Made by a program: the position numbers and the translations under genes. A stretch of DNA of 64,000 nt, from NCBI RefSeq assembly GCF_902652985.1, contig NC_047017.1, forward strand, positions 17,174,001 through 17,238,000, read 5' to 3'. Position 1 is the first letter of the stretch. Every line of letters starts with the position of its first letter. This DNA is from Pecten maximus (lineage: Eukaryota). This document shows positions 6,185 to 37,486 of the stretch, in pieces. The notes beneath the pieces were generated by a model. It did no database searches, had not been told where the DNA came from, and saw nothing but the letters and a program-made list of their open reading frames with translations.

Positions 6185-6276
6185 TGAAGTCAAGAGATTT
6201 TATTACCAAATGAATACAATAAATTAAAATTGCTGTCATTTGATTATTATCTACCTGTCTCCACCTCAGATACTAA

Positions 6277-7716
6277 TACTGCTGCCATTTACCTGTCTGA
6301 GGGACTTCCTCAGATACTGCTGCCATTTACCTGTCTGAGGGACTTCCTCAGATACTACTGCCATTTACCTGTCTGTGGGACTTCCCAGATACTACTGCCA
6401 TTTACCTGTCTGTGGGACTTCCTCAAATACTATTACCATTTACCTGTCTGAGGGACTTCCTCAGATACTACTGCCATTAACCTGTCTGAGGGACTTCCTC
6501 AGATACTACTGCCATTTACCTGTCTGAGGGACTTCCTCAGATACTACTGCCATTTACCTGTCTGAGGGACTTCCCAGATACTACTGCCATTTACCTGTCT
6601 GTGGGACTTCCTCAAATACTATTACCATTTACCTGTCTGAGGGACTTCCCCAGATACTACTGCCATTTACCTGTCTGTGGGACTTCCTCAAATACTATTA
6701 CCATTTACCTGTCTGAGGGACTTCCTCAGATACTACTGCCATTTACCTGTCTGTGGGACTTCCACAGATACTATTACCATTTACCTGTCTGTGGGACTTC
6801 CTCAGATACTACTGCCATTTACCTGTCTGAGGGACTTCCTCAGATACTACTGCCATTTACCTGTCTGTGGGACTTTCTCAGATACTACTGCCATTTACCT
6901 GTCTATGGGACTTCCTCAAATACTATTACCATTTACCTGTCTGAGGGACTTCCTCAGATACTACTGCCATTTACCTGTCTGTGGGACTTTCTCAGATACT
7001 ACTGCCATTTACCTGTCTATGGGACTTCCTCAGATACTACTGCCATTTACCTGTCTGGGACTTCCTCAGATACTACCGCCATTTACCTGTCTGTGGGACT
7101 TCCTCAGATACTACTGCCATTTACCTGTCTGGGACTTCCTCAGATACTACCGCCATTTACCTGTCTGTGGGACTTCCTCAGATACTACTGCCATTTACCT
7201 GTCTGGGACTTCCTCAGATACTACCGCCATTTACCTGTCTGTGGGACTTCCTCAGATACTACTGCCATTTACCTGTCTGGGACTTCCTCAGATACTACCG
7301 CCATTTACCTGTCTGTGGGACTTCCTCAGATACTACTGCCATTTACCTGTCTGGGACTTCCTCAGATACTACCGCCATTTACCTGTCTGTGGGACTTCCT
7401 CAGATACTACTGCCATTTACCTGTCTGTGGGACTTCCCAGATACTACTGCCATTTACCTGTCTGTGGGACTTCCACAGATACTATTACCATTTACCTGTC
7501 TGTGGGACTTCCTCAGATACTACTGCCATTTACCTGTCTGAGGGACTTCCTCAGATACTACTGCCATTTACCTGTCTGAGGGACTTCCTCAGATACTACC
7601 GCCATTTACCTGTCTGTGGGACTTCCTCAGATACTACTGCCATTTACCTGTCTGTGGGACTTCCTCAGATACTACTGCCATTTACCTGTCTGTGGGACTT
7701 CCTCAGATACTACTAC
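6277..7716. repeat. Minisatellite, 38-bp unit (36-37-bp variants), ~38 copies, degenerate flanks 6250-7816
   Basis: ccatttacctgtctg(t/a)gggacttcctcagatactactg. Confidence 0.97.
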
Positions 7717-8720
7717 CATCCACCTGTATCTACCTTTGATACTACTGTTATCTACCTGTCTCCACCTCAGAAACTCCTGTCATTTATACCTATCTGAGGA
7801 ACTTCCTCAGATACTATTTGCCAGTCTGGTTGCTATTGAAGACATGTCATGATCAGTGTGCAGGTTTTATGTTATAGCTGTGATTTTGTACATAAATCAC
7901 TAATGGTAACATGGATGGTTTAGATATGAAAGATGGGTATAGCTCTGGTGTAGGATAAATACTGATTTAGATGACTGGCAGGCTTTCTGAAGATTATGTT
8001 CTGTTGTGCTCTGATTCCAATGGAATTATTGATCATATGTTATTTGATGTCTCGAATTTTCACCTACAGCTGCAAGAGTCTTGGAGTATACGATATTAGG
8101 ATTGTGTTATCATACAATTAATTGGGAGACTATCTTTAAGCCTAGGAGCTATGTCCTTGGATGACCTTGAACAGCTTAGAAGGTATCTTGTATGGTATAA
8201 CCCTTTTAAGATATAGGCACTTGCTGACTCCATCTCCAGAGAAATGAAAATCTGAGAGTTATTCTCATAAAATTGTGTCTCTGTAATGATCAGACTTAAG
8301 CTTAGCTGCATGTTATGTGATCATGTACAATTTGTTAATTTCTGCCAGAATCCAAGAATCCATTAGACAAGGGAATCCATTATAAAGGAATTATTTATTA
8401 AAGCATTCTCATGTGTGATCTGCTGTGACTAGGATTTTGGCCAATAAAATCTTACATTAGGATCGATTTCTGCCTGGAATTTGGTGACATCAGAAGTCTT
8501 GGTGTTAGGTGAAGATTTGATGCACTTTTTTTGGTTGGATATAAAGTTGTCAACATGTGAAATCAATATATATGACAGTGCATTCTCCTGAGGGGTTATA
8601 AATAGATATCTACTGCTGTAACATATTTTTCCAGCTGTTCTTTATAAATAATAGAATACTGCAGTGAAATGTTTTTCCATCTGTTCTTTTTAAATAACAA
8701 TATATACTGATGAAAAAATT

Positions 8721-11700
8721 ACAGTTTGTACTGCTGGGAGATGTTGCTCCAACTGTTCTTTATAAATAACAGTTTGTACTGCTGGGAGATGTTTCTCTAG
8801 TTCTTCTTTATAAATAACAGTTTGTACTGCAGGGAGATGTTTCTCCAGCTGTTCTTTATAAAAAAAACCAGTTTGTACTGCTGGGAGATGTTTCTGTAGC
8901 TGTTCTTTATAGATAACAGTTTGTACTGCTGGGAGATGTTTCTCTGGCGTTCTTTATAAATAACAGTTTGTACTGCTGGGAGATGTTTCTGTAGCTGTTC
9001 TTTATAGATAACAGTTTGTACTGCTGGGAGATGTTTCTCTGGCGTTCTTTATAAATAACAGTTTGTACTGCTGGGAGATGTTTCTGTAGCTGTTCTTTAT
9101 AAATAACAGTTTGTACTGCTGGGAGATGTTTCTCTAGTTGTTCTTTATAAATAACAGTTTGTACTGCTGGGAGATGTTTCTCTGGCGTTCTTTATAAATA
9201 ACAGTTTGTACTGCTGGGAGATGTTTCTCTGGCGTTCTTTATAAATAACAGTTTGTACTGCTGGGAGATGTTTCTCTGGCGTTCTTTATAAATAACAGTT
9301 TGTACTGCTGGGAGATGTTGCTCCAACTGTTCTTTATGAATAATAGTTTGTACTGCAGGGAGATGTTTCTCCAGCTGTTCTTTATAAAAAAAACAGTTTG
9401 TACTGCTGGGAGATGTTTCTCTAGTTGTTCTCTATAAATAACAGTTTGTACTGCTGGGAGATGTTTCTCTGGCGTTCTTTATAAATAACAGTTTGTACTG
9501 CTGGGAGATGTTTCTCTAGTTGTTCTCTATAAATAACAGTTTGTACTGCTGGGAGATGTTTCTCTAGCTGTTCTTTATAAATAACAGTTTGTACTGCTGG
9601 GAGATGTTTCTCTAGTTGTTCTTTATAAATAACAGTTTGTACTCCTGGGAGATGTTTCTCTAGTTGTTCTCTATAAATAACAGTTTGTACTCCTGGGAGA
9701 TGTTTCTCTAGCTGTTCTTTATAAATAACAGTTTGTACTGCTGGGAGATGTTTCTGTAGCTGTTCTTTATAAATAACAGTTTGTACTGCTGGGAGATGTT
9801 TCTCTAGCTGTTCTTTATAAATAACAGTTTGTACTGCTAGGAGATGTTTCTCTGGCGTTCTTTATAAATAACAGTTTGTTCTGCTGGGAGATGTTTCTTT
9901 AGCTGTTCTTTATAAATAACAGTTTGTACTGCTGGGAGATGTTTCTCTAGCTGTTCTTTATAGATAACAGTTTGTACTGCTGGGAGATGTTTCTCTGGCG
10001 TTCTTTATAAATAACAGTTTGTACTGCTAGGAGATGTTTCTCTGGCTGTTCTTTATAAATAACAGTTTGTACTGCTGGGAGATGTTTCTCTAGCTGTTCT
10101 TTATAAATAACAGTTTGTACTGCTGGGAGATGTTTCTGCAGCTGTTCTTTATAAATAACAGTTTGTACTGCTGGGAGATGTTTCTCCAGCTGTTCTTTAT
10201 AAATAACAGTTTGTACTGCTGGGAGATGTTTCTCCAGCTGTTCTTTATAAATAACAGTTTGTACAGCTGGGAGATGTTTCTGTAGCTGTTCTTTACAAAT
10301 AAGAGTTTGTACTGCTGGAGATGTTTCTCTAGCGTTCTTTATAAATAACAGTTTGTACTGCTGGGAGATGTTTCTCTGGCGTTCTTTATAAATAACAGTT
10401 TGTACTGCTGGGAGATGTTTCTCTGGCGTTCTTTATAAATAACAGTTTGTACTGCTGGGAGATGTTTCTCTGGCGTTCTTTATAAATAACAGTTTGTACT
10501 CCTGGGAGATGTTTCTCTGGCGTTCTTTATAAATAACAGTTTGTACTGCTGGGAGATGTTTCTCTGGCTGTTCTTTATAAATAACAGTTTGTACTGCTGG
10601 GAGATGTTTCTCTGGCGTTCTTTATAAATAACAGTTTGTACTGCTGGGAGATGTTTCTCTGGCGTTCTTTATAAATAACAGTTTGTACTACTGGGAGATG
10701 TTTCTCTGGCGTTCTTTATAAATAACAGTTTGTACTGCTGGGAGATGTTTCTCTAGCTGTTCTTTATAAATAACAGTTTGTACTGCTGGGAGATGTTTCT
10801 CTAGTTTTTCTCTATAAATAACAGTTTGTACAGCTGGGAGATGTTTCTTTAGCTGTTCTTTATAAATAACAGTTTGTACTGCTGGGAGATGTTTCTCTAG
10901 CTGTTCTTTATAAATAACAGTTTGTACTGCTGGGAGATGTTTCTCTAGTTGTTCTCTATAAATAACAGTTTGTACTGCTGGGAGATGTTTCTGTAGCTGT
11001 TCTTTATAAATAACAGTTTGTACTGCTGGGAGATGTTTCTCTAGTTGTTCTCTATAAATAACAGTTTGTACTGCTGGGAGATGTTTCTGTAGCTGTTCTT
11101 TATAAATAACAGTTTGTACTGCTGGGAGATGTTTCTCCAACTGTTCTTTATAAATAACAGTTTGTACTGCTGGGAGATGTTTCTCCAACTGTTCTTTATA
11201 AATAACAGTTTGTACTGCTGGGAGATGTTTCTCTAGTTGTTCTCTATAAATAACAGTTTGTACTGCTGGGAGATGTTTCTGTAGCTGTTCTTTATAAATA
11301 ACAGTTTGTACTGCTGGGAGATGTTTCTCTAGCTGTTCTTTATAAATAACAGTTTGTACTGCTGGGAGATGTTTCTGTAGCTGTTCTTTATAAATAACAG
11401 TTTGTACTGCTGGGAGATGTTTCTGTAGCTGTTCTTTATAAATAACAGTTTGTACTGCTGGGAGGTGTTTCTCTAGTTGTTCTTTATAAATAACAGTTTG
11501 TACTGCTGGGAGATGTTTCTCTAGTTGTTCTCTATAAATAACAGTTTGTACTGCTGGGAGATGTTTCTCCAGCTGTTCTTTATAAATAACAGTTTGTACT
11601 GCTGGGAGATGTTTCTCTAGCTGTTCTTTATAAATAACAGTTTGTACTGCTGGGAGATGTTTCTCTGGCGTTCTTTATAAATAACAGTTTGTACTGCTGG

Positions 11701-13283
11701 GAGATGTTTCTCTGGCTGTTCTTTATAAATAACAGTTTGTACTCCTGGGAGATGTTTCTGTAGCTGTTCTCTATAAATAACAGTTTGTACTGCTGGGAGA
11801 TGTTTCTCTAGCTGTTCTGTATAAATAACAGTTTGTACTGCTGGGAGATGTTTCTCTAGCTGTTCTTTATAAATAACAGTTTGTACAGCTGGGAGATGTT
11901 TCTCTAGTTCTCTATAAATAACAGTTTGTACTCCTGGGAGATGTTTCTGTAGCTGTTCTTTATAAATAACAGTTTGTACTGCTGGGAGGTGTTTCTCTAG
12001 CTGTTCTCTATAAATAACAGTTTGTACTGCTGGGAGATGTTTCTCTAGCTGTTCTTTATAAATAACAGTTTGTACTGCTGGGAGATGTTTCTCTAGTTGT
12101 TCTCTATAAATAACAGTTTGTACTGCTGGGAGATGTTTCTCTAGCTGTTCTTTATAAATAACAGTTTGTACTGCTGGGAGATGTTTCTCTAGCTGTTCTT
12201 TATAAATAACAGTTTGTACTGCTGGGAGATGTTTCTCTAGCTGTTCTCTATAAATAACAGTTTGTACTGCTGGGAGATGTTTCTCTAGCTGTTCTTTATA
12301 AATAACAGTTTGTACTGCTGGGAGATGTTTCTCTAGTTGTTCTCTATAAATAACAGTTTGTACTGCTGGGAGATGTTTCTCTAGTTGTTCTCTATAAATA
12401 ACAGTTTGTACTGCTGGGAGATGTTTCTCTAGTTGTTCTCTATAAATAACAGTTTGTACTGCTGGGAGATGTTTCTCTAGCTGTTCTTTATAAATAACAG
12501 TTTGTACTGCTGGGAGATGTTTCTCTGGCGTTCTTAATAAATAACAGTTTGTACTGCTGGGAGATGTTTCTCTGGCGTTCTTTATAAATAACAGTTTGTA
12601 CTGCTAGGAGATGTTTCTCTGGCGTTTTTTTATAAATAACAGTTTGTACTGCTGGGAGATGTTTCTGTAGCTGTTCTTTATAAATAACAGTTTGTACTGC
12701 TGGGAGATGTTTCTCTGGCTGTTCTCTATAAATAACAGTTTGTACTGCTGGGAGATGTTTCTCTGGCGTTCTTTATAAATAACAGTTTGTACTGCTGGGA
12801 GATGTTTCTCTGGCGTTCTTTATAAATAACAGTTTGTACTGCAGGGAGATGTTTCTCTAGCTGTTCTTTATAAATAACAGTTTGTACTGCTGGGAGATGT
12901 TTCTCTGGCGTTCTTTATAAATAACAGTTTGTACTGCTGGGAGATGTTTCTCTGGCGTTCTTTATAAATAACAGTTTGTACTGCAGGGAGATGTTTCTCT
13001 AGCTGTTCTTTATAAATAACAGTTTGTACTGCTAGGAGATGTTTCTCTAGCTGTTCTTTATAAATAACAGTTTGTACTGCTGGGAGATGTTTCTCTAGCT
13101 GTTCTTTATAAATAACAGTTTGTACTGCTGGGAGATGTTTCTCTGGCTGTTCTTTATAGATAACAGTTTGTACTGCTGGGAGATGTTTCTTCAGCTGTTC
13201 TTTATAAATAACAGTTTGTACTGCTGGGAGATGTTTCTCTAGCTGTTCTTTATAAATAACAGTTTGTTCTGCTGGGAGATGTT
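8721..13283. repeat. Minisatellite, 48-bp unit (47-bp variant), ~95 copies
   Basis: aaataacagtttgtactgctgggagatgtttctctagctgttctttat; degenerate copies from ~8610. Confidence 0.98.
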
Positions 13284-18913: not shown

Positions 18914-21053
18914 ATGTAACCTATACTGGATACCCTATACCTCCTGTAACAACCTACAACCCTAGTAAATACCCTATATATATTATGTAACCTATACTGG
19001 ATACCCTATACCTCCTCTAACACCCCACATCCCTAGTAAATACCCTATATATATTATGTAACCTATACTGGATACCCTATACCTCCTGTAACACCCTACA
19101 ACCCTAGTAAATACCCTATATATATTTTGTAACCTATACTGGATAGCCTATACCTCCTGTAACACCCTATCAACCCTAGTAAATACCCTATATATATTTT
19201 GTAACCTATACTGGATACTCTATACCTCCTGTAACACCCTATCAACCCTAGTAAATACCCTATATATATTTTAAACTTATATAATGTAACCTGTGGATAC
19301 CCTATACCTCCTGTAACACCCTACAACCCTAGTAAATACCCTATATATATTATGTAACCTATACTGGATATCCTATACCTCCTCTAACACCCCACATCCC
19401 TAGTAAATACCCTATATATATTTTAAGCTTATATTATGTAACCTATACTGGATACCCTATACCTCCTCTAACACCCCACAACCCTAGTAAATACCCTATA
19501 TATATCTTAAACTTATATTATGTAACCTATACTGGATACCCTATACCTCCTCTAACACCCTACAACCCTAGTAAATACCCTATATATATTATGTAACCTG
19601 TGGATTCCCTATACCTCCTGTAACACCCTACAACCCTAGTAAATACCCTATATATATTATGTAACCTATACTGGATATCCTATACCTCCTCTAACACCCC
19701 ACATCCCTAGTAAATACCCTATATATATTTTAAGCTTATATTATGTAACCTATACTGGATACCCTATACCTCCTCTAACACCCCACAACCCTAGTAAATA
19801 CCCTATATATATCTTAAACTTATATTATGTAACCTATACTGGATACCCTATACCTCCTCTAACACCCTACAACCCTAGTAAATACCCTATATATATTATG
19901 TAACCTATACTGGATACCCTATACCTCCTCTAACACCCCACAACCCTAGTAAATACCCTATATATATTTTTAACTTATTATGTAACCTGTGGATACCCTA
20001 TACCTCCTGTAACACCCTACAACCCTAGTAAATACCCTATATATATTATGCAACCTATACTGGATACCCTATACCTCCTCTAACACCCCACAACCCTAGT
20101 AAATACCCTATATATATTTTAAGGTTATATTATGTAACCTGTGGATACCCTATACCTCCTGTAACATCCTACAACCCTAGTAAATACCCTATATATATTA
20201 TGCAACCTATACTGGATACCCTATACCTCCTCTAACACCCCACAACCCTAGTAAATACCCTATATATATTTTAAGGTTATATTATGTAACCTATACTGGA
20301 TACCCTATACCTCCTCTAACACTCTACAACCCTAGTAAATACCCTATAGATATATCTTAAACTTATATTATGTAACCTGTGGATACCCTATACCTCCTGT
20401 AACATCCTACAACCCTAGTAAATACCCTATATATATTATGTAACCTATACTGGATACCCTATACCTCCTCTAACACCCCACAACCCTAGTAAATACCCTA
20501 TATATATTTTAAACTTATTATGTAACCTGTGGATGCCCTATACCTCCTGTAACACCCTACAACCCTAGTAAATACCCTATATATATTATGTAACCTATAC
20601 TGGATACTCTATACCTCCTGTAACACCCTACAACCCTAGTAAATACCCTATATATATTATGTAACCTATACTGGATACCCTATACCTCCTGTAACACCCC
20701 ACAACCCTAGTAAATACCCTATATATATTATGTAACCTATACTGGATACCCTATACCTCCTCTAACACCCCACAACCCTAATAAATACCCTATATATATA
20801 TTTTAAACTTATATTATGTAACCTGTGGATACCCTATACCTCCTGTAACACCCTACAACCCTAGTAAATACCCTATATATATTATGTAACCTATACTGGA
20901 TACCCTATACCTCCTCTAACACCCCACAACCCTAGTAAATACCCTATATATATATATCTTAAACTTATATTATGTTACTTATACTGGATACCCTATACCT
21001 CCTCTAACACCCCACAACCCTAGTAAATACCCTATATATATATTATGTAACCT
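18914..21053. repeat. Minisatellite, ~71-bp unit (68-86-bp variants), ~28 copies
   Basis: atgtaacctatactggataccctatacctcctgtaacaccctacaaccctagtaaataccctatatatatt. Confidence 0.97.
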
Positions 21054-24333: not shown

Positions 24334-24769
24334 ACATCTCTGTAACATATAGAGGGAACTCCCATATACACTATCAATTTATTAATATGGTGGCGGTTTC
24401 TTGGATGTAATTGCAGAAAATTTAGTGAGTTTACGTAATTTGCTTCAAGCTTTCTATGCTGCCGAAGTTGGAGAGGCAAGACATATGATTATATGCATTT
24501 ATTAGCAGTCTACAACAATATATTCTCATTGATGTCCCCAGAGTTCTTAATTCAAACTGGTAATTCTTCAGATAGTACTCCCATTCCCAAACATACAGTG
24601 TGGGGATAAAGAATAGATGTTAATTGAATTTGTTCATGCTATATGGTTGTAGGTAATGTAAGCTGTGGGTCCACAATGTCACAGAACAAGCATGAGGTTG
24701 TTGACCTCAGCACTGCTAGTGCAATGATTTGGCAAAGATAGGAATGTGAGAGAGGTCCACTAAAGGACA

Positions 24770-24774
24770 ATGAG
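24770..24774 (+). CDS. DISP1: Dispatched coding exon 1 (ATG AG; end of a mostly 5'-UTR exon)
   Basis: acaATGAG|GTAAGT is a perfect donor with A at -3. There is an in-frame TAA at 24761. Phase 2 joins the C of exon 2 to give Met-Ser. Confidence 0.75.
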
Positions 24775-27700
24775 GTAAGTCTCAGAACAGTATTTAGTCT
24801 TAAAACATGGTTACAGGCCTGTCCATTGTGGATAATATAGAGCTACTCTGCAATGTGAGGGTACTGGCCCACTGTGTGGTACTACTGTTGTATATTTATA
24901 CATTACAGCTATGTGAGGGTACTGGCCCCACTGTGTGGTACTACTGTTGTATATTTATACATTACAGCTATGTGAGGGTACTGGCCCCACTGTGTGGTAC
25001 TACTGTTGTATATTTATACATTACAGCTATGTGAGGGTACTGCCCCACTGTGTGGTACTACTGTTGTATATTTATACAGCTATGTGAGGGTACTGACCCC
25101 ACTGTGTGGTACTACTGTTGTATATTTATACATTACAGCTATGTGAGGGTACTGGCCAACTGTGTGGTACTACTGTTGTATATTTATACATTACAGCTAT
25201 GTGAGGGTACTGGCCCACTGTGTGGTACTACTGTTGTATATTTATACAGCTATGTGAGGGTACTGGCCCACTGTGTGGTACTACTGTTGTATATTTATAC
25301 AGCTATGTTAGGGTACTGGCCCCACTGTGTGGTACTACTGTTGTATATTTATACATTACAGCTATGTGAGGGTACTGGCCCAAGGTGTGGTACTACTGTT
25401 GTATATTTATACATTACAGCTATGTGAGGGTACTGGCCCCACTGTGTGGTACTACTGTTTTATATTTATATATTACAGCTATGTGAGGGTACTGGCCCCA
25501 CTGTGTGGTACTACTGTTTTATATTTATATATTACAGCTATGTGAGGGTACTGGCCCACTGTGTGGTACTACTGTTTTATATTTATATATTACAGCTATG
25601 TGAGGGTACTGGCCCCCACTGTGTGGTACTACTGTTGTATATTTATACATTACAGCTATGTGAGGGTACTGGCCCACTGTGTGGTACTACTGTTGTATAT
25701 TTATACAGCTATGTGAGGGTACTGGCCCACTGTGTGGTACTACTGTTGTATATTTATACATTACAGCTATGTGAGGGTACTGGCCCCACTGTGTGGTATT
25801 ACTGTTGTATATTTATACAGCTATGTGAGGGTACTGGCCCACTGTGTGGTACTACTGTTGTATATTGATACATTACAGCTATGTGAGGGTACTGACCCAC
25901 TGTGTGGTACTACTGTTGTATATTTATATATTACAGCTATGTGAGGGTACTGGCCCCACTGTGTGGTACTACTGTTGTATATTTATATATTACAGCTATG
26001 TGAGGGTACTGGCCCCACTGTGTGGTACTACTGTTGTATATTTATACAGCTATGTAAGGGTACTGGTCCCACTGTGTGGTACTACTGTTGTATATTTATA
26101 CATTACAGCTATGTGAGGGTACTGGCCCCACTGTGTGGTATTACTGTTGTATATTTATACAGCTATGTGAGGGTACTGGCCCACTGTGTGGTACTACTGT
26201 TGTATATTTATACATTACAGCTATGTGAGGGTACTGGCCCACTGTGTGGTACTACTGTTGTATATTTATACATTACAGCTATGTGAGGGTACTGACCCCA
26301 CTGTGTGGTACTACTGTTGTATATTTATACATTACAGCTATGTGAGGGTACTGACCCCACTGTGTGGTACTACTGTTGTATATTTATACATTACAGCTAT
26401 GTGAGGGTACTGACCCCACTGTGTGGTACTACTGTTGTATATTTATACAGCTATGTGAGGGTACTGGCCCACTGTGTGGTACTACTGTTGTATATTTATA
26501 CATTACAGCTATGTGAGGGTACTGACCCACTGTGTGGTACTACTGTTGTATATTTATACAGCTATGTGAGGGTACTGACCCCACTGTGTGGTACTACTGT
26601 TGTATATTTATACAGCTATGTGAGGGTACTGGCCCCACTGTGTGGTACTACTGTTGTATATTTATATATTACAGCTATGTGAGGGTACTGGCCCCCACTG
26701 TGTGGTACTACTGTTGTATATTTATACATTACAGCTATGTGAGGGTACTGGCCCACTGTGTGGTACTACTGTTGTATATTTATATATTACAGCTATGTGA
26801 GGGTACTGGCCCACTGTGTGGTACTACTGTTGTATATTTATATATTACAGCTATGTGAGGGTACTGGCCCACTGTGTGGTACTACTGTTGTATATTTATA
26901 CATTATAGCTATGTGAGGGTACTGACCCCACTGTGTGGTACTACTGTTGTATATTTATACATTACAGCTATGTGAGGGTACTGACCCCACTGTGTGGTAC
27001 TACTGTTGTATATTTATACATTACAGCTATGTGAGGGTACTGGCCCACTGTGTGGTACTACTGTTGTATATTTATACATTATAGCTATGTGAGGGTACTG
27101 GCCCCACTGTGTGGTACTACTGTTGTATATTTATACATTACAGCTATGTGAGGGTACTGACCCACTGTGTGGTACTACTGTTGTATATTTATACATTATA
27201 GCTATGTGAGGGTACTGGCCCCACTGTGTGGTACTACTGTTGTATATTTATACATTACAACTATGTGAGGGTACGGGCCCACTGTGTGGTACTACTGTTG
27301 TATATTGATACAGCTATGTGAGGGTACTGACCCCACTGTGTGATACTACTGTTGTATATTTATACATTACAGCTATGTGAGGGTACTGGCCCCACTGTGT
27401 GGTACTACTGTTGTATATTTATACAGCTATGTGAGGGTACTGAACCCACTGTGTGATACTACTGTTGTATATTTATACATTACAGCTATGTGAGGGTACT
27501 GACCCACTGTGTGGTACTACTGTTGTATATTTATACATTACAGCTATGTGAGGGTACTGACCCCACTGTGTGGTACTACTGTTGTATATTTATACATTAC
27601 AGCTGTGTGAGGGTACTGGCCCCACTGTGTGGTACTACTGTTGTATATTTATACAGCTATGTGAGGGTACTGGCCCCACTGTGTGGTACTACTGTTGTAT

Positions 27701-30700
27701 ATTTATACATTACAGCTATGTGAGGGTACTGACCCACTGTGTGGTACTACTGTTGTATATTTATACATTACAGCTATGTGAGGGTACTGACCCCACTGTG
27801 TGGTACTACTGTTGTATATTTATACATTACAGCTATGTGAGGGTACTGGCCCACTGTGTGGTACTTCTAGTACTGTTGTATATTTATACATTACAGCTAT
27901 GTGAGGGTACTGGCCCCACTGTGTGGTACTACTGTTGTATATTTATACATTACAGCTATGTGAGGGTACTGACCCACTGTGTGGTACTACTGTTGTATAT
28001 TTATACATTACAGCTATGTGAGGGTACTGGCCCCACTATGTGGTACTACTGTTGTATATTTATACAGCTATGTGAGGGTACTGGCCCCACTGTGTGGTAC
28101 TACTGTTGTATATTGATACATTACAGCTATGTTAGGGTACTGGCCCACTGTGTGGTACTACTGTTGTATATTCATACATTACAGCTATGTGAGGGTACTG
28201 GCCCACTGTGTGGTACTACTGTTGTATATTCATACATTACAGCTATGTGAGGGTACTGGCCCACTGTGTGGTACTACTGTTGTATATTTATACATTACAG
28301 CTATGTGAGGGTACTGGCCCACTGTGTGGTATTACTGTTTTATATTTATATATTACAGCTATGTGAGGGTACTGGCCCACTGTGTGGTACTACTGTTGTA
28401 TATTTATACATTACAGCTATGTGAGGGTACTGGCCCACTGTGTGGTATTACTGTTTTATATTTATATATTACAGCTATGTGAGGGTACTGGCCCCACTGT
28501 GTGGTACTACTGTTGTATATTTATACATTACAGCTATGTGAGGGTACTGACCCACTGTGTGGTACTACTGTTGTATATTTATACATTACAGCTATGTGAG
28601 GGTACTGGCCCACTGTGTGGTACTACTGTTGTATATTTATACAGCTATGTGAGGGTACTGGCCCACTGTGTGGTACTACTGTTGTATATTTATATATTAC
28701 AGCTATGTGAGGGTACTGGCCCCACTGTGTGGTACTACTGTTGTATATTTATACATTACAGCTATGTGAGGGTACTGGCCCCACTGTGTGGTACTACTGT
28801 TGTATATTTATACATTACAGCTACGTGAGGGTACTGACCCACTGTGTGGTACTACTGTTGTATATTTATACATTACAGCTATGTGAGGGTACTGACCCCA
28901 CTGTGTGGTACTACTGTTGTATATTTTTACATTACAGCTATGTGAGGGTACTGGCCCCACTGTGTGGTACTACTGTTGTATATTTTTACATTACAGCTAT
29001 GTGAGGGTACTGGCCCACTGTGTGGTACTACTGTTGTATATTTATACAGCTATGTGAGGGTACTGGCCCACTGTGTGGTACTACTGTTGTATATTTATAC
29101 ATTACAGCTATGTGAGGGTACTGGCCCCACTGTGTGGTATTACTGTTGTATATTTATACAGCTATGTGAGGGTACTGGCCCACTGTGTGGTACTACTGTT
29201 GTATATTTATACATTACAGCTATGTGAGGGTACTGGCCCACTGTGTGGTACTACTGTTGTATATTTATACATTACAGCTATGTGAGGGTACTGGCCCCAC
29301 TGTGTGGTACTACTGTTGTATATTTATACATTACAGCTATGTGAGGGTACTGGCCCACTGTGTGGTACTTCTAGTACTGTTGTATATTTATACATTACAG
29401 CTATGTGAGGGTACTGACCCACTGTGTGGTACTACTGTTGTATATTTTTACATTACAGCTATGTGAGGGTACTGGCCCACTGTGTGGTACTACTGTTGTA
29501 TATTTATACATTACAGCTATGTGAGGGTACTGGCCCACTGTGTGGTACTACTGTTGTATATTTATACATTACAGCTATGTGAGGGTACTGGCCCCACTGT
29601 GTGGTACTACTGTTGTATATTTATACATTACAGCTATGTGAGGGTACTGGCCCCACTGTGTGGTACTACTGTTGTATATTTATACATTACAGCTATGTGA
29701 GGGTACTGGCCCACTGTGTGGTACTTCTAGTACTGTTGTATATTTATACATTACAGCTATGTGAGGGTACTGGCCCACTACCCCTATGTGGTACTACTGG
29801 CAGTGTTTGTGGTGGTGGCCACCTGCCTCATTCTCTCCACAACAGTCATTCAGCTCCCAGATTTTGGAGACCCTATGGCAGTAAGTACATTAGATTTTCT
29901 ATAAAAAAAAAACCTACTGTTACTGATCTGTTCAGCAAATTAGAAATGGATTTCATATGGTTGATCCCTAGGACCATTATTTGTTTATAACTGAATGTGT
30001 TAACTTCATGTCATGAATAGGGAAGGATCTTAAAAAAAATAGAATCCAAAGGAAGGTTGAACAATTTGAAATAATTATGAACTTCTTGATCAAGGGGATG
30101 TAGTTTTGTATCTGTAAAAGTGAGCTTTTCTTAAACAAAAATATGTGGCCCAGTAAAAAAATAGTGATTTGTTTTGAAAAGACTGATTCTTGAAAAAATC
30201 TTGTTTGAAATTCCCTTTTTCATATTTAATGAATAAATTAAATTTGCTTTTAGCATCCTTAATCCGAGAATTACTGAACTGTTTGATTTGTGGCATGTCC
30301 TTAACTGATGTATTTAATTTCTTCATAAAAAAAGATATTTTCCAGTTAAAAAGGGAAGCAATAATGCATTCAGCCTGTTGGGCGTACTGAGTTAACAGTC
30401 TTAGAATACAATTCTAAAGTTTCTCTGTAGAAAAAATATATCCTTTCTAAATCACTTGCTCGGGAATATATACTCACATTGGTACTATGACAGGGGTTTG
30501 AGCCACGTGGTACAGACCTAGGAGAGCGGCTGGTTACCTTCCACAATGTCATGTACAACCCTAACAACAAGCTCAGCCTGCTGCCATTTGGAGCCGGATT
30601 TGAGGACCAGATTGAGGACCAGATCACGGATAAGACTGACAATGACACTGAGCTCTGGGACGAGCAGGGATATGTCAAACGTAGCACAAAAAGAACCACT

Positions 30701-33700
30701 CTTTGTAACCTGCCAGGTAAATACATGTACTAACATAATTCAGGTAAAAATGTAGTAATACGATAATTCTACAGGTCTCGGCTTCATGCATGTTCCCTGC
30801 ATTCAAAAATTAATTCGCTTAAAATTTTCCATTTGAAAACGTTATTTGATTGACAGAAGAAATCTTAAATAAAAAAAACTTTCCATTAATTATTCAAAGC
30901 TTTCCTTTTGAAAATTTTAGGTCAAAGAATTTCCTTCAGTTAATGTGCCTGTAGTTCATATATTACACCACTGGTGAATATATGTACCCTCAGATATGCC
31001 CACTCAATACATACCATATTTATCCTCAAATATGCCCACTCAATACATACCATATTTATCCTCAAATATGCCCACTCAATACATACCATATTTAGCCTCA
31101 AATATGATCCCTCAATACATACCATATTTAGCCTCAAACAACCCCCCTCCCCTAGTGTTTAAGTTTGGTGAGGGCTTATTTGTAAAGTATTTTAAGCTGC
31201 TTATTTTTAGATGATTCTGAAAGAACAAGCATACTTGGTATTGCTAAAGCAATATATGTACCCTACTGGCTTCCGCTGAAAATATTAACAGTGATCTTGA
31301 CCTTGACCTTGACCCTGCTACTCACACTGAAGTTACATACAAACTTTCACCAACATTACCTTGAATCATGGCTGAGAAAAAGGGGACTAATAATTTTTTT
31401 TTTTTTGTGGGAAGGGGCTGAATTGCAGATAATTGCAATAAACCCACAGATACAACCACTCCTTGTAAAAATCCAGGTAAATGTAAATACAGTGTACAGG
31501 TAAGACACTGTTAAAGAAGCCAACACACCCGCACATAAAAGAAACACACTTATAAAGAATAAGACGTTCTGATCCATATTTGTTATATTCTTTCAGTAAA
31601 GATATTATTTAAGCTGCTTATAATTATTTGTGAACTTTTCCGTCTCTGTTATAGATAAGGACTACCGTGGATTGGCAAGAATTGTGTTCAGGAGTAAAGA
31701 TGGCAGCAATCTTTTCTCAGCAGACAAGATTCGACATATGTGTCGTGTCGAGGAGGAACGCATTCACACACACCCTACATACCCAGGTATGTGTCTGAGA
31801 GCCAACGATGACAGCTGCTGTCGAAGCTGGTCTTTAGGGAACTATATTGCTTTCCTGACGGGTCACGAGAATTGCTCTGAGATAAGAGATGAGGATGTGA
31901 GCAAGGTGGGACGTTTGTTGCAGAGTTGTGCTCCATTCTATCACAACTACACTCTGAAACACAACTGTGACACACTTAAACGGGGAGCCAAGCGATATAT
32001 CTGCCAAAACATGCCTAAGAAATGTATGAGACTTAACACTGTGTATGACATATTCCACTACATAGCAGATGTTGAGTTCCTACCAGCTAACAACAAGGTG
32101 TCGCGGCCAGTGCTGAGTTGGGCAGTGACTTTTCTGCCTGTGTATGCAAAAGAGAACACTGTGGAGCTTTATAAACATATGGAGGAATGGACAGAATCTC
32201 TAGAGGAAGTTCAGATTGTTGGGGTGAACTTTGGCATCAAGTACGTGCTATTTAGCGAGTATTTGATGTCAGATACTGTATGGCTGGTGTCGGCTGCCTG
32301 TGTGATCTTCCTCATCATCTGGCTGTATTGTGCTTCTCTGTTTATCACTATAATGACTTTCCTCATGATGTTCTGGTCATTAGAGCTGGCCTACTTCATT
32401 TACATGCTTGTGTTCGAGATCAAGTTCTTTCCTTACATGAACCTGGTCACAGTAATCATTGTGATTGCGATCGGTGCTGATGATGTCTTCATATATAGTA
32501 AAGTGTGGCATTTGGCAAAGTCGGAGCCAAACAATGGGACACTGGAAAAAATTGTATCCAACACACTCAAGCACGCGACTTTATCGATGTTTGTGACAAG
32601 TTTTACGACTGCGGCAGCTTTGTTTACAACCACAATAAGCTCCATCACGGCCATCAAGTGTTTCAGTATCTACGCTGGTCTGACTGTCGTCTGCAACTTT
32701 GTTTTGGTGGTGACATGGCTGCCTGCTTCTATCATCATCCATGACAAGTGGTGCAACTGTGAAGCCTGGTACAACCCCGAGTTCCTCACCAACAAAGGAA
32801 TCTGCTACTACATGTGTATAGTTCCGTATAAAGTACACGACCAGTTCTCGGAATGGTCAAAGATACTCTTTGAAAAAGTAGTACCCTTCATCATGATAAA
32901 ATTACGAATCCTTTGGATTGTGTTATTGGGAGGAATAGGAATTGGTGGCATAATTGTGATATTTTTTTACCCAAAATTAAAACTGCCGTCTTCTGAAAAA
33001 TTCCAAGTGTTTTCCTCTGATCATCTGTTTGAACATTACGATTTTGTGCTGAACAGTAAATTTTGGTTTGAGCGAGAACACACCGAGCACAGATCATTGT
33101 TGCCATTGACGATAGTGTGGGGTGTCCTACCCATAGACAATGGTAACAGTCTCGATCCTTATGACAAAGGAGACTTGAAGTTCGATTACAGTTTTAATCC
33201 TTTAACATCTAATGCACAAAAATGGTTTCTAAATTTTTGTAAGAAAATAAGACAGACAGATTTTTACTTTGACCTACCTGGCTTCCAGTTCACAAACTGT
33301 ATGTTTGAGGATTTTCAGGCCCTGATGAAAAGACCCTGTATTGACTACATGCAGGGTATAGACCACAGCCCCTGTTGTAATGCGACTGAAAGCCAGCCGC
33401 TGTCTTCCACATCAATGCTCCAGTGTCTGACTGAGTACATTCCAGTTCTGAGGACAACTCCTGGTGTCCGCTACAACTTCTACACCCCAGGCCTCAGATT
33501 TTACAATGGTAGAATATGTGCCTTCATTGTACAGTTCTTGAGTAACGAAACTTTTTCATTTGCTTATGACAGAATCAATGTTTTTTATAAGAAAGTCAAC
33601 AGTTGGGTGAAACAGGAACTATCGACAGCCCCACCTGAAATAAAAAATGGCTGGTTCATCAGTGACTTTGAATTTTATGACCTTCAAAACAGTCTACTTG

Positions 33701-34611
33701 GGGAGACCCCACTGGCGTTTGGTGTGTCACTGGCTGTCGTGTCTGTTGTTGCATTTCTAACAACGTTAAACTTGTTGATAAGTTTCCTGGCCATTTTGAG
33801 TATTGCGTTTGTGATGTTTACTACTGTGGCAGCCCTGGTGCTGCTGGGATGGGACCTTAACATTCTAGAGTCAGTGGTTGTCACCGTGGCCATTGGCATG
33901 TCAATAGACTACACACTCCATTATGGTGTATCCTACCAACTGTGCCCCGACTTCGACCGAAAGACACGAGTTTCCACTTCTGTAGCAAGACTCGGAAATG
34001 TTATCTCCATGGCTGCTTTGACAACATTCCTCGCAGGTGCCATGATGATGCCATCCACAGTGCTTGTTTACCAGAAGTTTGGCATTTTCCTTATGCTCAT
34101 CATATCAATCAGTTGGACCTACTCCACATTTTTTTTCCAAGGCCTGCTGTGCGTTTGTGGGCCTACCAAGGGTTTCACCCAGTTACACTGGCCTTCCAGT
34201 GAATGTTGCTCAAATTCTGTACCAGATCGTCGAGACAAGACTCGTTATTCCACATCAGAGTCCACCATGTCAACTTCAAGCAGCTATCACCACACAACGA
34301 GTAGTGAGAGTCATGAGATGGAACCACTGACAGATGATTACAGACGTCGATACTCCAGTCGCTCACGTCCAAGCTACAGTCGCACAATTATGGCCGCTGA
34401 TTACAGCCCGGAACATCCGCGGCGTGGCAGCCATGTTCGTTTCTCCATCGATAGTGTGGACAAATCTGTATCCGTGTTTGATCCAGAAGATGAGCTGGCT
34501 CATGCACAACGCTGTCGATCAAGAGCGGAATCAGAGGTGTTTTTAGAAGACGAAGAATTAGAATCTCCAACAAATGAAACAAACGATAAACATAAGGACT
34601 CAGGGTCTTGA
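24770..34611 (+). CDS. DISP1: Dispatched homolog (RND/SSD family Hedgehog exporter), 4 coding exons: join(24770..24774,29757..29880,30494..30716,31655..34611), ~1102 aa
   Basis: Manual splicing with GT-AG and consistent phases (2,0,1) gives MSYVRVLAHYPYVVLLAVFVVVATCLILSTTVIQLPDFGDPMA|GFEPRGTDLGERLVTF...LCNLP|DKDYRGLARIVF...CCRSWSLGNYIA. This matches the Dispatched signatures LPDFxDP/GFEPRGT and CCxSWxLGNYIA. TM4 GADDVF (32473-) and TM10 GMSIDY (33895-) carry the conserved acidic residues. Confidence 0.93.
24853..29799 (+). repeat. Intronic minisatellite, 58-bp unit (53-64-bp variants), ~85 copies, derived from the Dispatched intron1/exon2 junction
   Basis: ctatgtgagggtactggcccactgtgtggtactactg + ttgtatatttatacattacag; the last copy runs directly into coding exon 2. 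Confidence 0.97.
29757..29880 (+). CDS. DISP1: Dispatched exon 2 (TM1 and LPDFGDP motif)
   Basis: ttacag|C TAT GTG...ATG GCA|gtaagt; encodes YVRVLAHYPYVVLLAVFVVVATCLILSTTVIQLPDFGDPMA. Confidence 0.92.
30494..30716 (+). CDS. DISP1: Dispatched exon 3 (start of extracellular domain 1)
   Basis: cag|GGG TTT GAG CCA CGT GGT (GFEPRGT)...CTG CCA G|gtaaat. Confidence 0.93.
30988..31138. repeat. Minisatellite, 36-bp unit, ~4 copies (Dispatched intron 3)
   Basis: cctcaaatatgcccactcaatacataccatatttat. Confidence 0.9.
31224..31393 (-). mobile_element. Internally deleted HINE-like element in Dispatched intron 3
   Basis: aacaag..gtattgctaaagcaata hairpin at one end and aggggactaataa at the other; related to 5909-6184. 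Confidence 0.55.
31655..34611 (+). CDS. DISP1: Dispatched terminal exon (ECD1, sterol-sensing domain TM2-6, ECD2, TM7-12, C-tail)
   Basis: The 993-aa ORF 31630..34611 is entered at tctctgttatag|AT (phase 1). It has multiple TM helices plus GADD and GxxIDY motifs. Confidence 0.96.
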
Positions 34612-34933
34612 TGCTGATTATATAACCATATAGCACACATCGACGTGTGTCTTACCTCAATCTGTTCCAATACCAAACATAGAATCTCAGGTCACTCTGT
34701 ATACCGCTACTCTATTGTATCAGCATTATATATCACAAATATATATATTTAAATCTTTTCTTCAAACTGAACTCATTGTGAGAGATATTTGAACATTTTT
34801 TTTACTGTTTATCATAAAAAAAATTCCCGTTGAAGTTTTTGTAGATCAAAGTGCTGCGTCTTCCTTAGATATGTGCTCAAAATGGAAACAAGACATATTG
34901 CAAAAAGGCTTTTTGTGTTAGTATGAACAGCAA

Positions 34934-37486
34934 AGGGAATGTTGTGTTAGGACATACTGTGAGGGGTTTGTGTTAAAACATACTGTGAGGGGTTTGACTG
35001 TGAGGGGTTTGTTGTGTTAGGACATACTGTGAGGGGTTTGACTGTGAGGGGTTTGTTGTGTTAGGACATACTGTGAGGGGTTTGTTGTGTTAGGACATAC
35101 TGTGAGGGGTTTGTTGTGTTAGGAATACTGTGAGGGGTTTGTGTTAGGACATACTGTGAGGGGTTTGTTGTGTTAGGACATACTGTGAGGGGTTTGTTGT
35201 GTTAGGACATACTGTGAGGGTTTGTTGTGTTAGGAATACTGTGAGGGGTTTGTCTTAGGACATACTGTGAGAGGTTTGTTGTGTTAGGACATACTGTGAG
35301 GGGTTTGTGTTAGGACATACTGTGATGGGCATGTTGTATAAGGACATACTAAGAGGTGTTGTGTTAGGACATACTGTGATGAGTTTGTTGTGTTAGGACA
35401 TACTGTGAGGGGAATGTTGTGTTAGGACAAACTGTGAGGGGTTTGTTGTGTTAGGAATACTGTGAGGGGTTTGTTGTGTTAGGACATACTGTGAGGGGTT
35501 TGTTGTGTTAGGAATACTGTGAGGGGTTTGTTGTGTTAGGAATACTGGGAGGGGTTTGTTGTGTTAGGACATACTGTGAGGGGTTTGTGTTAGGACAAAC
35601 TGTGAGGGGTTTGTTGTGTTAGGAATACTGTGAGGGGTTTGTTGTGTTAGGACATACTGTGAGGGGTTTGTTGTGTTAGGACATACTGAGGGGCATGTTG
35701 TGTTAGGACATACTGTGAGGGGTTTGACTGTGAGGGGTTTGTTGTGTTAGGAATATTGTGAGGGGTTTGTTGTGTTAGGACATACTGAGGGGCATGTTGT
35801 GTTAGGACATACTGTGAGGGGTTTGACTGTGAGGGGTTTGTTGTGTTAGGACATGCTGTGAGGGGTTTGTGTTAGGACATATTGTGAGGGGTTTGACTGT
35901 GAGGGGCATGTTGTGTTAGGACATACTGTGAGGGGTTTGACTGTGAGGGGTTTGTTGTGTTAGGACATACTGTGGGGGGTTTGTTGTGTTAGGACATACT
36001 GTGAGGGGCATATTGTGTTAGGAATACTGTGATGGGCATGTTGTGTTAGGACATACTATGAGGGGCATATTGTGTTAGGACATACTGTGAGTGGCATGTT
36101 GTGTTAGGACATACTGTGAGGGGCATGTTGTGTTAGGAATACTGTGAGGGGCATGTTGTGTTGGGACATACTGTGAGGGGTATGTTGTGTTAGGACATAC
36201 TGTGAGGGGCATGTTGTGTTAGGACATACTGTGAGGGGCATGTTGTGTTAGGACATACTGTGAGGGGCATGTTGTGTTAGGACATACTGTGAGGGGCATG
36301 TTGTGTTAGGGTGTTAGGACATACTGTGAAAGGTTTGTTGTGTTAGGACATACTGTGAGGGGCATGTTGTGTTAGGACATACTGTGAGGGGCATGTTGTG
36401 TTGGGACATACTGTGAGGGGCATGTTGTGTTAGGGGTGTTAGGACATACTGTGAGGGGCATGTTGTGTTAGGACATACTGTGAGGGGCATGTTTGTGTTA
36501 GGAATACTGTGAGGGGTTTGTTGTGTTAGAAATACTGTGAGGGGCATGTTGTGTTAGGACATACTGTGAGGGGCATGTTGTGTTAGGACATACTGTGAGG
36601 GGCATGTTGTGTTAGGGTGTTAGGACATACTGTGAGGGGCATGTTGTGTTAGGACATACTGTGAGGGGCATGTTGTGTTAGGGTGTTAGGACATACTGTG
36701 AAAGGTTTGTTGTGTTAGGACATACTGTGAGGGGCATGTTGTGTTAGGACATACTGTGAGGGGCATGTTGTGTTAGGACATACTGTGAGGGGCATGTTGT
36801 GTTAGGGTGTTAGGACATACTGTGAGGGGCATGTTGTGTTAGGACATACTGTGAGGGGCATGTTGTGTTAGGAATACTGTGAGGGGTTTGTTGTGTTAGA
36901 AATACTGTGAGGGGCATGTTGTGTTAGGACATACTGTGAGGGGCATGTTGTGTTAGGACATACTGTGAGGGGCATGTTGTGTTAGGACATACTGTGAGGA
37001 ACATGTTGTGTTGGGACATGCTGTGAGGGGTTTGTTGTGTTAGGACATACTGTGAGGGGTTTGTTGTGTTAGGACATACTGTGAGGGGTTTGTTGTGTTA
37101 GGAATACTGTGAGGGGCATGTTGTGTTAGGAATACTGTGAGGGGCATGTTGTGTTAGGAAATAATGTAAGGGGCATGTTGTGTTAGGAATACTGTGAGGG
37201 GCATGTTGTGTTAGGACACACTGTGAGGGGTTTGTTGTGTTAGGAATACTGTGAGGGGCATGTTGTGTTAGGACATACTGTGAGGGGCATGTTGTGTTAG
37301 GACATACGGTGAGCTGCATGTTGTGTTAGGACATACTGTGAGGGGCATGTTGTGTTAGGACATACTGTGAGAGGTTTGTTGTGTTAGGACAGACTGTGAG
37401 GGGTTTGTTGTGTTAGGACATACTGTGAGGGGTTTGTTGTGTTAGGACATACTGTGAGGGGTTTGTTGTGTTAGGACATACTGTGA
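34934..37486 (+). repeat. Minisatellite, 29-bp unit, ~88 copies, probably within the Dispatched 3' UTR
   Basis: gttgtgttaggacatactgtgagggg(ttt/cat). Confidence 0.97.

What the first reader, a model, noticed from the sequence alone, without database searches (positions are those of the whole stretch)
24775..29880. Dispatched intron 1 is ~85 tandem copies of its own 3' splice junction; only the last acceptor leads into the intact exon
Seen: the 58-bp unit is the last 21 nt of the intron (ttgtatatttatacattacAG) plus the first ~43 nt of exon 2 with a 6-nt deletion (encoding YVRVLAH-CVVLL versus the true YVRVLAHYPYVVLL). Only ~78 nt of the 4982-nt intron are unique. The first identical acceptor is at 24908, only 134 nt from the donor, yet the correct one is at 29756. 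I checked the nearest alternatives. 29692 adds 64 nt and frameshifts to a stop in exon 3. 29633 adds 123 nt in frame but contains GCT ATG TGA. 29574 frameshifts. Inference: the gene must ignore dozens of decoy 3' splice sites with near-identical upstream context, presumably through exon definition with the GTAAGT at 29881. Array length could act as a heritable rheostat on Dispatched dosage (and so Hedgehog release) via mis-splicing and NMD. I know of no described class of 'splice-junction satellites' like this.
Basis: partly seen in the sequence, partly recalled or inferred. Interest (0 to 1): 0.92.

Follow-up and report, generated by a model that had tools for sequence, protein, structure and literature searches.

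The report
Splice-acceptor "mirage" minisatellite in scallop Dispatched
Intron 1 of the king scallop's only Dispatched-1-like gene is almost entirely about 84 tandem copies of its own intron-end/exon-start junction, and the one mRNA contig across the junction joins at the copy next to the real exon. This repeat type is already described ("mirages" in amphioxus, the human F7 VNTR) and is common in this genome, so it is most likely tolerated rather than regulatory.

Summary
A 58-bp unit is repeated 85.3 times at 24853-29776. It fills all but 78 nt of the 4982-nt intron 1 of the Pecten maximus "protein dispatched homolog 1-like" gene. Each unit is the last 21 nt of the intron plus the start of exon 2, with a 6-nt deletion and one substitution.

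There are 82 in-register decoy acceptors. 43 match the real one across the whole -20..+3 splice-site window. Every decoy would give a premature stop.

The unit occurs nowhere else in the genome, and the gene has no close paralogue.

Use of the exon-proximal site fits exon definition or proximity, but this was not tested. Nothing supports a dosage "rheostat". The claim that no such class is described is wrong. Minisatellites that span exon-intron boundaries are known as "mirages" in amphioxus, including a 3'-junction case, and as the human F7 IVS7 VNTR.

About a third of this window is minisatellite. The scan has already noted many similar arrays at other loci of this genome (unchecked notes).

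Verdict: a real, large new member of a known kind, probably a tolerated by-product of a very repeat-prone genome.

The parts
24581..24774 (+). Exon 1 (5' UTR plus start codon ATG at 24770-24772, then AG). The 5' limit is only inferred.
   Evidence: The RNA contig in run X11 has a 192-nt loose end before 29755. Its last 30 letters equal window 24743-24772 with one SNP at 24761 (sequence). The 5' limit assumes the contig is colinear with the genome. The NCBI model P0001 starts MS|YVRV.
24775..24852 (+). Unique 5' part of intron 1, starting with donor GTAAGT (24775-24780)
   Evidence: No significant similarity to the repeat unit (p about 0.37).
24853..29756 (+). 58-bp minisatellite ('mirage' array), about 84 units. 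Each unit is an exon-2-like 37 nt plus the 21-nt intron end with AG. It holds 82 in-register decoy 3' splice sites.
   Evidence: TRF; unit map and alignment; decoy analysis; the only locus with this unit in the genome.
29736..29756 (+). Authentic 3' splice site (21-mer ending in ...CATTACAG), which is the intron part of the last unit
   Evidence: RNA contig junction; sequence.
29757..29880 (+). Exon 2 (codons 2-43, first transmembrane helix). Its first 43 nt are the source of the exon-like part of the unit. TRF extends the array to 29776.
   Evidence: Joint 29880>30494 GT..AG in RNA run X10.
30494..30716 (+). Exon 3
   Evidence: Joints 29880>30494 and 30714>31653 (cut +2) in RNA contigs; sequence; P0001.
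31655..34611 (+). Exon 4, coding part with the sterol-sensing domain, up to the stop codon at 34609-34611
   Evidence: Open frame; Pfam PF12349 and PF02460; 100% identity to P0001.

Best explanation
This is a locus-specific 'mirage' minisatellite. A roughly 64-bp piece straddling the intron-1/exon-2 border of the single-copy Pecten maximus dispatched-1-like gene was duplicated in tandem. One copy lost 6 nt, and that variant was amplified by unequal exchange or replication slippage to about 84 copies. This swelled an intron that was probably around 100 nt to 4982 nt.

The spliceosome joins exon 1 to the acceptor that abuts the real exon. The 82 look-alike acceptors are silent or used too rarely to matter, and any such product would carry a premature stop.

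The most likely selection rule is an inference. The acceptor is weak and AT-rich, and is recognised only together with the rest of exon 2 and its strong GTAAGT donor 124 nt downstream. This is exon definition plus preference for the exon-proximal copy, mirroring the exclusive use of the exon-proximal donor in the human F7 IVS7 VNTR.

The array itself is most likely a tolerated by-product of a genome region that makes minisatellites very often, not a regulatory device.
For: Shown:
- Array structure and its register with the junction.
- The unit is found only at this locus in the 918-Mb genome.
- The exon version is ancestral, because HYPY is conserved in mussel and oyster orthologues.
- An RNA contig in run X11 joins ...GGACAATG(AG) to 29757. 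Three RNA-like runs show no contig in the last 550 nt of the array or in intron 2, and they show GT..AG joints for introns 2 and 3.
- An independent DNA sample (X4) has array contigs at 13-40 times single-copy word depth, plus a contig across 29750-29887.
- The assembly was built from 66x PacBio reads (PMC7191990).
- About 34% of the window is minisatellite arrays. These include a 48-bp x 96 and a 29-bp x 85 array next to the gene.
- AG is kept in every one of the 81 aligned units. Variation consists of a few shared variants, as expected for recent amplification or homogenisation without selection against the decoys.

Precedents:
- Amphioxus mirages do not disturb splicing (PMC3087553).
- F7 pseudo-sites are functional but silent, and the exon-proximal one wins (PMC1557585).
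Against: - The RNA evidence is one contig at depth about 3.5 in one run. Contigs drop rare isoforms and NMD removes mis-spliced RNA, so decoy use of tens of percent cannot be excluded.
- The first decoy gives a 134-nt intron. Under intron definition it would be expected to win, and why it does not is unexplained.
- The three nearest decoys give exons still short enough for exon definition.
- The array's 5' edge starts with an exon-like part, which a single simple duplication does not predict.
Confidence: 0.75

Rival explanations
1. Dosage rheostat. A meaningful fraction of transcripts splice to decoys and are destroyed by NMD, so heritable array length sets Dispatched output and hence Hedgehog release.
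For: - All 82 decoys lead to premature stops upstream of two further exon junctions.
- 43 decoys are indistinguishable from the true site over the 23-nt splice-site window.
- The gene is single copy, so dosage could matter.
- Minisatellites of this kind are length-unstable in amphioxus (PMC3087553).
Against: - No decoy junction and no array-containing RNA contig was seen in three RNA-like runs, though sensitivity was low.
- The amphioxus and F7 precedents show the copies are silent.
- Earlier notes of this scan (unchecked) report the same structure at many unrelated genes of this genome, which argues for a mutational by-product.
- There is no sign of selection on the decoys, either to keep or to kill them.
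Confidence: 0.08
2. Active silencing. The decoys are repressed by a factor that coats the array. For example, a GU-rich-binding protein could bind the UGUGUGG motif that the 6-nt deletion created in every unit but which is absent from the real exon.
For: - The only consistent difference between decoy and true contexts starts 24 nt downstream of the AG, where the unit reads CACUGUGUGG and the exon CACUACCCCUAUGUGG.
- Multivalent repeats are good platforms for RNA-binding proteins (general knowledge, not tested here).
Against: - The motif is short.
- No binding data exist.
- The F7 study found no autonomous intronic silencer and explained silence by position alone.
- RNA structure does not mask the sites: fold z-score 0.34.
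Confidence: 0.07
3. Assembly artefact. The array is absent, or its length is grossly wrong, in the real chromosome.
For: Long tandem arrays are error-prone in wtdbg2/CLR assemblies. Copy number was not measured directly here.
Against: - The array is a mosaic of at least 19 unit variants rather than a collapsed or stuttered block.
- At 4.9 kb it lies within PacBio read length, at 66x coverage.
- An independent individual's DNA contigs carry the unit at tens-fold depth and cross the array/exon border.
Confidence: 0.04

Closest known systems
Amphioxus 'mirage' minisatellites (Adh3, Canestro et al. 2002 NAR, cited through PMC3087553; globin genes BflGb6/BflGb9, Ebner et al. 2010, PMC3087553)
   Same: - Both are tandem repeats whose unit spans an exon-intron boundary, lying in the intron and abutting the real junction.
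- BflGb6 repeats the 3' end of an intron plus the 5' part of exon 2, exactly as here.
- Many units keep the AG/GT signals.
- Normal splicing is not disturbed.
   Different: - The scale differs: about 84 units of 58 bp (4.9 kb) here, against 3-6 units of 150-160 bp (globin) or 10-72-bp units (Adh3).
- The phylum differs (mollusc).
- Length or somatic instability was not tested here.
Human F7 intron 7 37-bp VNTR (Borensztajn et al. 2006, PMC1557585)
   Same: - A minisatellite whose terminal unit spans the exon/intron border gives a row of splice sites identical to the authentic one.
- Only the exon-proximal copy is used.
   Different: - F7 concerns the donor (5') side with 5-9 copies. Here it is the acceptor (3') side with 82 decoys.
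- In F7 the pseudo-sites were proven functional by mutagenesis. Nothing comparable has been done here.
Introns and alternative splicing born from tandem arrays or internal tandem repeats (Zhuo et al. 2007 PNAS, cited in PMC3488318; De Grassi & Ciccarelli 2009, PMC2812944; UBC dual-specific sites, PMC10809524)
   Same: - Repeat units carry splice signals.
- Each unit here also has a donor-like GTGAGG 4 nt after the AG, so a unit looks like a 4-nt exon plus a 54-nt intron.
   Different: In those cases the repeated sites are actually used and create new introns or isoforms. Here the RNA contig shows a clean exon 1-exon 2 join without any CTAT insert.
Other splice-junction minisatellites noted by this scan in the same genome (e.g. 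s1-783128, s1-789105, s1-783130, s1-783937)
   Same: Same species and same architecture: an intron end plus exon start, amplified 16 to 240 times and ending at the real exon.
   Different: They are at other genes with unrelated unit sequences. These are unchecked notes apart from their own follow-ups, and I did not re-examine those loci.

Membership tests
'Mirage' (exon-intron-boundary) minisatellite | Head-to-tail array with a minisatellite-sized unit | tested here: met
   58 bp x 85.3 copies, 93% matches.
'Mirage' (exon-intron-boundary) minisatellite | The unit spans an exon-intron boundary and the array abuts the authentic junction | tested here: met
   The unit is 21 nt of intron end plus 37 nt matching exon 2 positions 1-43 (6-nt deletion, one substitution). 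The last unit is the real junction.
'Mirage' (exon-intron-boundary) minisatellite | Derived from the host gene, not a dispersed repeat | tested here: met
   All 43 genome hits lie at window 24850-29799. The exon peptide is conserved in other bivalves.
'Mirage' (exon-intron-boundary) minisatellite | Regular splicing is maintained, using the authentic copy | tested here: met
   One RNA contig joins exon 1 to 29757. No array contigs were seen in three RNA-like runs, at low depth.
'Mirage' (exon-intron-boundary) minisatellite | Length instability or polymorphism | not testable with these tools
F7-type silent pseudo-splice-site array | [quoted passage not shown] | tested here: met
   43 decoys are identical over -20..+3. 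42 are identical for 26 nt upstream, and up to 23 nt downstream.
F7-type silent pseudo-splice-site array | Pseudo-sites are functional when the authentic site is removed, and selection is by position | not testable with these tools
   This needs minigene mutagenesis.
Recursive-splicing ratchet points | Juxtaposed AG|GT that regenerates a 5' splice site after the first step | tested here: not met
   AG and the donor-like GTGAGG are separated by CTAT. The RNA contig shows no CTAT insertion at the junction.
Dispatched (RND/SSD transporter for Hedgehog release) | Sterol-sensing domain and full-length homology to Dispatched 1 | tested here: met
   PF12349 at 1.3e-13 and PF02460 at 6.5e-10. 100% identity to the P. 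maximus 'protein dispatched homolog 1-like' and 40-60% to mollusc and vertebrate DISP1. No close paralogue in the genome.

The most novel reading that the evidence does not exclude
The array is not neutral. With 82 decoy acceptors ahead of the real one, a length-dependent share of pre-mRNAs is lost to decoy splicing and NMD. Alternatively, the decoys are held silent by a factor bound to the repeat-specific UGUGUGG motif. Either way, copy-number alleles would tune the output of the scallop's only Dispatched-1-like gene.
Probability: 0.08. Interest if true: 0.7.

Novelty: new member of a known kind. Interest (0 to 1): 0.3.

Why it matters
This is a clean natural experiment on 3' splice-site choice. 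Dozens of acceptors match the real one over at least 49 nt of context, in a single-copy developmental gene, and the one mRNA contig across the junction uses the last one. Together with the many sister arrays noted in this genome, it could be used to test acceptor-side position and exon-definition rules, as the F7 VNTR was for donors. It also shows how minisatellite growth inflates short introns. It does not establish a new class of element or any regulatory role.

Tried and rejected
Only the last 10 or so units plus exons 2-4 could be laid. The exon 1-exon 2 join is therefore shown by a loose end, not by a listed joint, and use of the first decoys could not be examined.
Orthologous introns of other scallops, oyster and mussel could not be fetched, so the array's age and the predicted roughly 100-nt ancestral intron are untested.
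- Masking of decoys by RNA secondary structure is rejected. A 384-nt fold gives z-score 0.34, and 61 of 100 shuffles fold as well.
- The unit as a dispersed satellite or transposon part is rejected. It has a single locus in the genome.
- Relatedness of the unit to the unique intron part, to exon 1 (shared ATGTGAG) or to the 29-bp array after the gene (shared TGTGAGGG) is not above chance, with p between 0.17 and 0.67.
- Recursive or stepwise splicing through the donor-like GTGAGG in each unit would leave CTAT inserts, which the contig does not show.
- A compensating paralogue is absent. The next hits are at most 35% identical over short SSD stretches.
- The Zhuo 2007 and Canestro 2002 papers are not held and are cited only through papers that cite them.
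Exons were handled by reference, and decoy consequences were read from contiguous genomic sequence.
Full report
**What is there**

The window is part of chromosome-scale scaffold C3 of the Pecten maximus assembly. The assembly has 918,306,378 bp in 3,983 scaffolds. This is the same size and scaffold count as the published PacBio/10X/Hi-C assembly (PMC7191990).

Tandem Repeats Finder reports a 58-bp unit, 85.3 copies, 93% matches, at 24853-29776. The flanks, read directly, show four things:
- A donor ...CAATGAG|GTAAGT after 24774.
- 78 unique nucleotides (24775-24852).
- The array.
- The acceptor ...CATTACAG| ending at 29756, followed by a 124-nt exon (29757-29880) and GTAAGT.

**The gene**

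- The 995-codon open frame at 31624-34608 carries a sterol-sensing domain (PF12349, PF02460).
- It is 100% identical to the NCBI model 'protein dispatched homolog 1-like [Pecten maximus]' (P0001, 1102 aa).
- That model begins MSYVRVLAHYPYVVLL.
- Mussel (..MASYTRVVVHYPYMVFL) and oyster (MTRYARLIAHYPYVIIL) orthologues keep HYPY. The exon version is therefore ancestral and the repeat is the derived copy.
- No close paralogue exists in the genome. The next hits are at most 35% identical over short SSD stretches.

**Anatomy of the array**

- Cutting at in-register AG|CTATGT gives 83 acceptors, of which 82 are decoys.
- Unit lengths are 58 (32 units), 59 (28), 53-54 (16), 60 (2) and 64 (3).
- Two double-length pieces arise where the in-register AG|CTATGT was not matched. 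In one the AG is mutated to AA. In the other the AG is intact but the following motif reads CTACGTG.
- The unit consensus equals the last 21 nt of the intron plus exon 2 positions 1-43. The exceptions are a 6-nt deletion and one A-to-G change.
- Variation sits in a few shared variants: G/A in 20 units, an extra C in 37, a 5-nt deletion in 16 and a 6-nt insertion in 3. These are arranged as a mosaic, not a strict higher-order repeat. This is the usual look of a minisatellite evolving by unequal exchange.
- AG is retained in all 81 aligned units.
- 43 decoys are identical to the true site over -20..+3, and 42 for 26 nt upstream. Identity downstream runs for up to 23 nt.
- Each unit also has a donor-like GTGAGG 4 nt after the AG.
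- The array starts with an exon-like part rather than an intron-like part. The 5' edge is therefore not what one simple duplication would leave.
- The 78-nt unique segment, exon 1 and the neighbouring 29-bp array are not significantly similar to the unit.
- The unit occurs only here in the genome: 43 hits, all at window 24850-29799.

**Consequences of decoy use**

These were read from contiguous genomic sequence only. The two letters before every acceptor are AG, as at the end of exon 1.
- 81 decoys meet a stop before 29880, at a median of 40 codons.
- The nearest decoy, at 29692, adds 64 nt and stops at the second codon of exon 3.
- None of the 32 in-frame decoys is open.

**RNA and DNA evidence**

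The stretch 29200-34700 could be laid. Three runs behave as RNA. Their contigs skip introns 2 and 3 at GT..AG (29880>30494; 30714>31653, cut +2) and have no depth in intron 2.

One contig of run X11 ends its match at 29755. It carries 192 further letters upstream, and the last 30 equal window 24743-24772 with one SNP. Since positions 24773-24774 and 29755-29756 are both AG, this is the exon 1 (24774) to exon 2 (29757) junction.

No RNA contig lies on the last 550 nt of the array. Depth on exon 2 is only 1-3.5, and contigs drop rare forms. This shows which junction the assembled mRNA uses. It does not show that decoy use is absent.

In an independent DNA sample (X4), array bins have summed word depth of 438-1330 against about 33.6 for single-copy sequence. 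One contig crosses 29750-29887. The array therefore exists at tens of copies in another individual. Exact length was not measured.

**How it most likely works**

Inference. The acceptor is AT-rich with a poor pyrimidine tract. It is probably recognised only in the context of the rest of exon 2 and its strong donor 124 nt downstream, with the exon-proximal copy preferred.

Exon definition alone does not separate the three nearest decoys, whose exons would be 188-306 nt. A proximity or position rule is therefore also required. The F7 study demonstrated such a rule experimentally for identical donors (PMC1557585).

RNA structure does not distinguish the sites (z-score 0.34).

One point remains unexplained. 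The first decoy lies only 134 nt from the donor and is transcribed minutes before the true site, yet the assembled junction contig does not use it.

**Comparison with what is known**

- Ebner et al. [quoted passage not shown] One of them, BflGb6, comprises the 3' end of an intron plus the 5' part of exon 2.
- They cite the Adh3 mirages of Canestro et al. [quoted passage not shown]
- The human F7 IVS7 37-bp VNTR is the donor-side equivalent.
- Internal tandem repeats at exon-intron boundaries are also catalogued in human segmental duplications (PMC2812944).

What is different here is the scale (82 decoys, 4.9 kb), the phylum and the host gene.

**Base rate**

About 21.6 kb of this 64-kb window (34%) is minisatellite. 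This includes a 48-bp x 96 array at 8716-13283 and a 29-bp x 85 array at 35041-37486, just downstream of the gene. With arrays this dense, seeding across a splice junction by chance is expected many times per genome. This is a rough inference, not a computed figure.

The scan's earlier notes list the same architecture at many other genes of this genome, such as a GPCR (35 bp x about 240), DAGLA (46 bp x about 159), FAM114A2, HERC1 and CDK14. I treated these as leads only. The 'mirage' name came from them, and I verified it in the paper.

**Verdict**

- The exon-definition idea is plausible but incomplete.
- The rheostat idea is unsupported.
- The novelty claim is refuted.
- This is a large new member of a known kind and a useful natural model for acceptor choice, most likely a tolerated by-product of minisatellite proliferation.

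**Limits**

Noticed in passing
window 8716-13283, 6276-7727, 18914-21043, 35041-37486, 42902-43744, 45405-47376: About a third of the window is long minisatellite arrays: 48 bp x 96, 38 bp x 39, 71/84 bp, 29 bp x 85, 35 bp x 25 and 321 bp x 6. The 29-bp array starts about 430 nt after the Dispatched stop codon. I did not check whether any of these is anchored on another gene's splice junction.
   Followed up: partly
window 24909-29760 (every unit) and 29761-29766: Each unit, and exon 2 itself, carries a donor-like GTGAGG 4 nt after the AG. A unit therefore looks like a 4-nt exon plus a 54-nt intron. The RNA contig shows no CTAT inserts, so these sites are not visibly used.
   Followed up: partly
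window 30856-31407 (intron 3): This stretch draws very high contig depth in both DNA (up to about 3100 against 34 for single copy) and RNA-like runs, with many loose ends and odd joints. It looks like a dispersed, expressed repeat or transposon fragment, and it includes the 36-bp x 4.4 array at 30980-31138.
   Followed up: no
window 43796-45066, minus strand: Open frames with reverse-transcriptase-like wording (for example ...ITILSVPCKVF...EEQAGFRR...) suggest a retroelement fragment next to the 35-bp and 321-bp arrays.
   Followed up: no
window 24761, 29850, 30661; 30726 and 31618: Transcribed SNPs were seen in the contigs: T>C at 24761 in RNA run X11, T>A at 29850 in X10 and in DNA run X4, and C>T at 30661 in X10, X11 and X4. 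The independent DNA sample X4 also has 6-nt intronic deletions. These could serve as allele markers for allele-specific expression tests.
   Followed up: no
window 24853: The array begins with an exon-like part (ATGTGAGGG...) directly after unique intron sequence, not with the intron-like 21-mer. The 5' edge has therefore been remodelled, or the founding event was not a simple junction duplication.
   Followed up: partly
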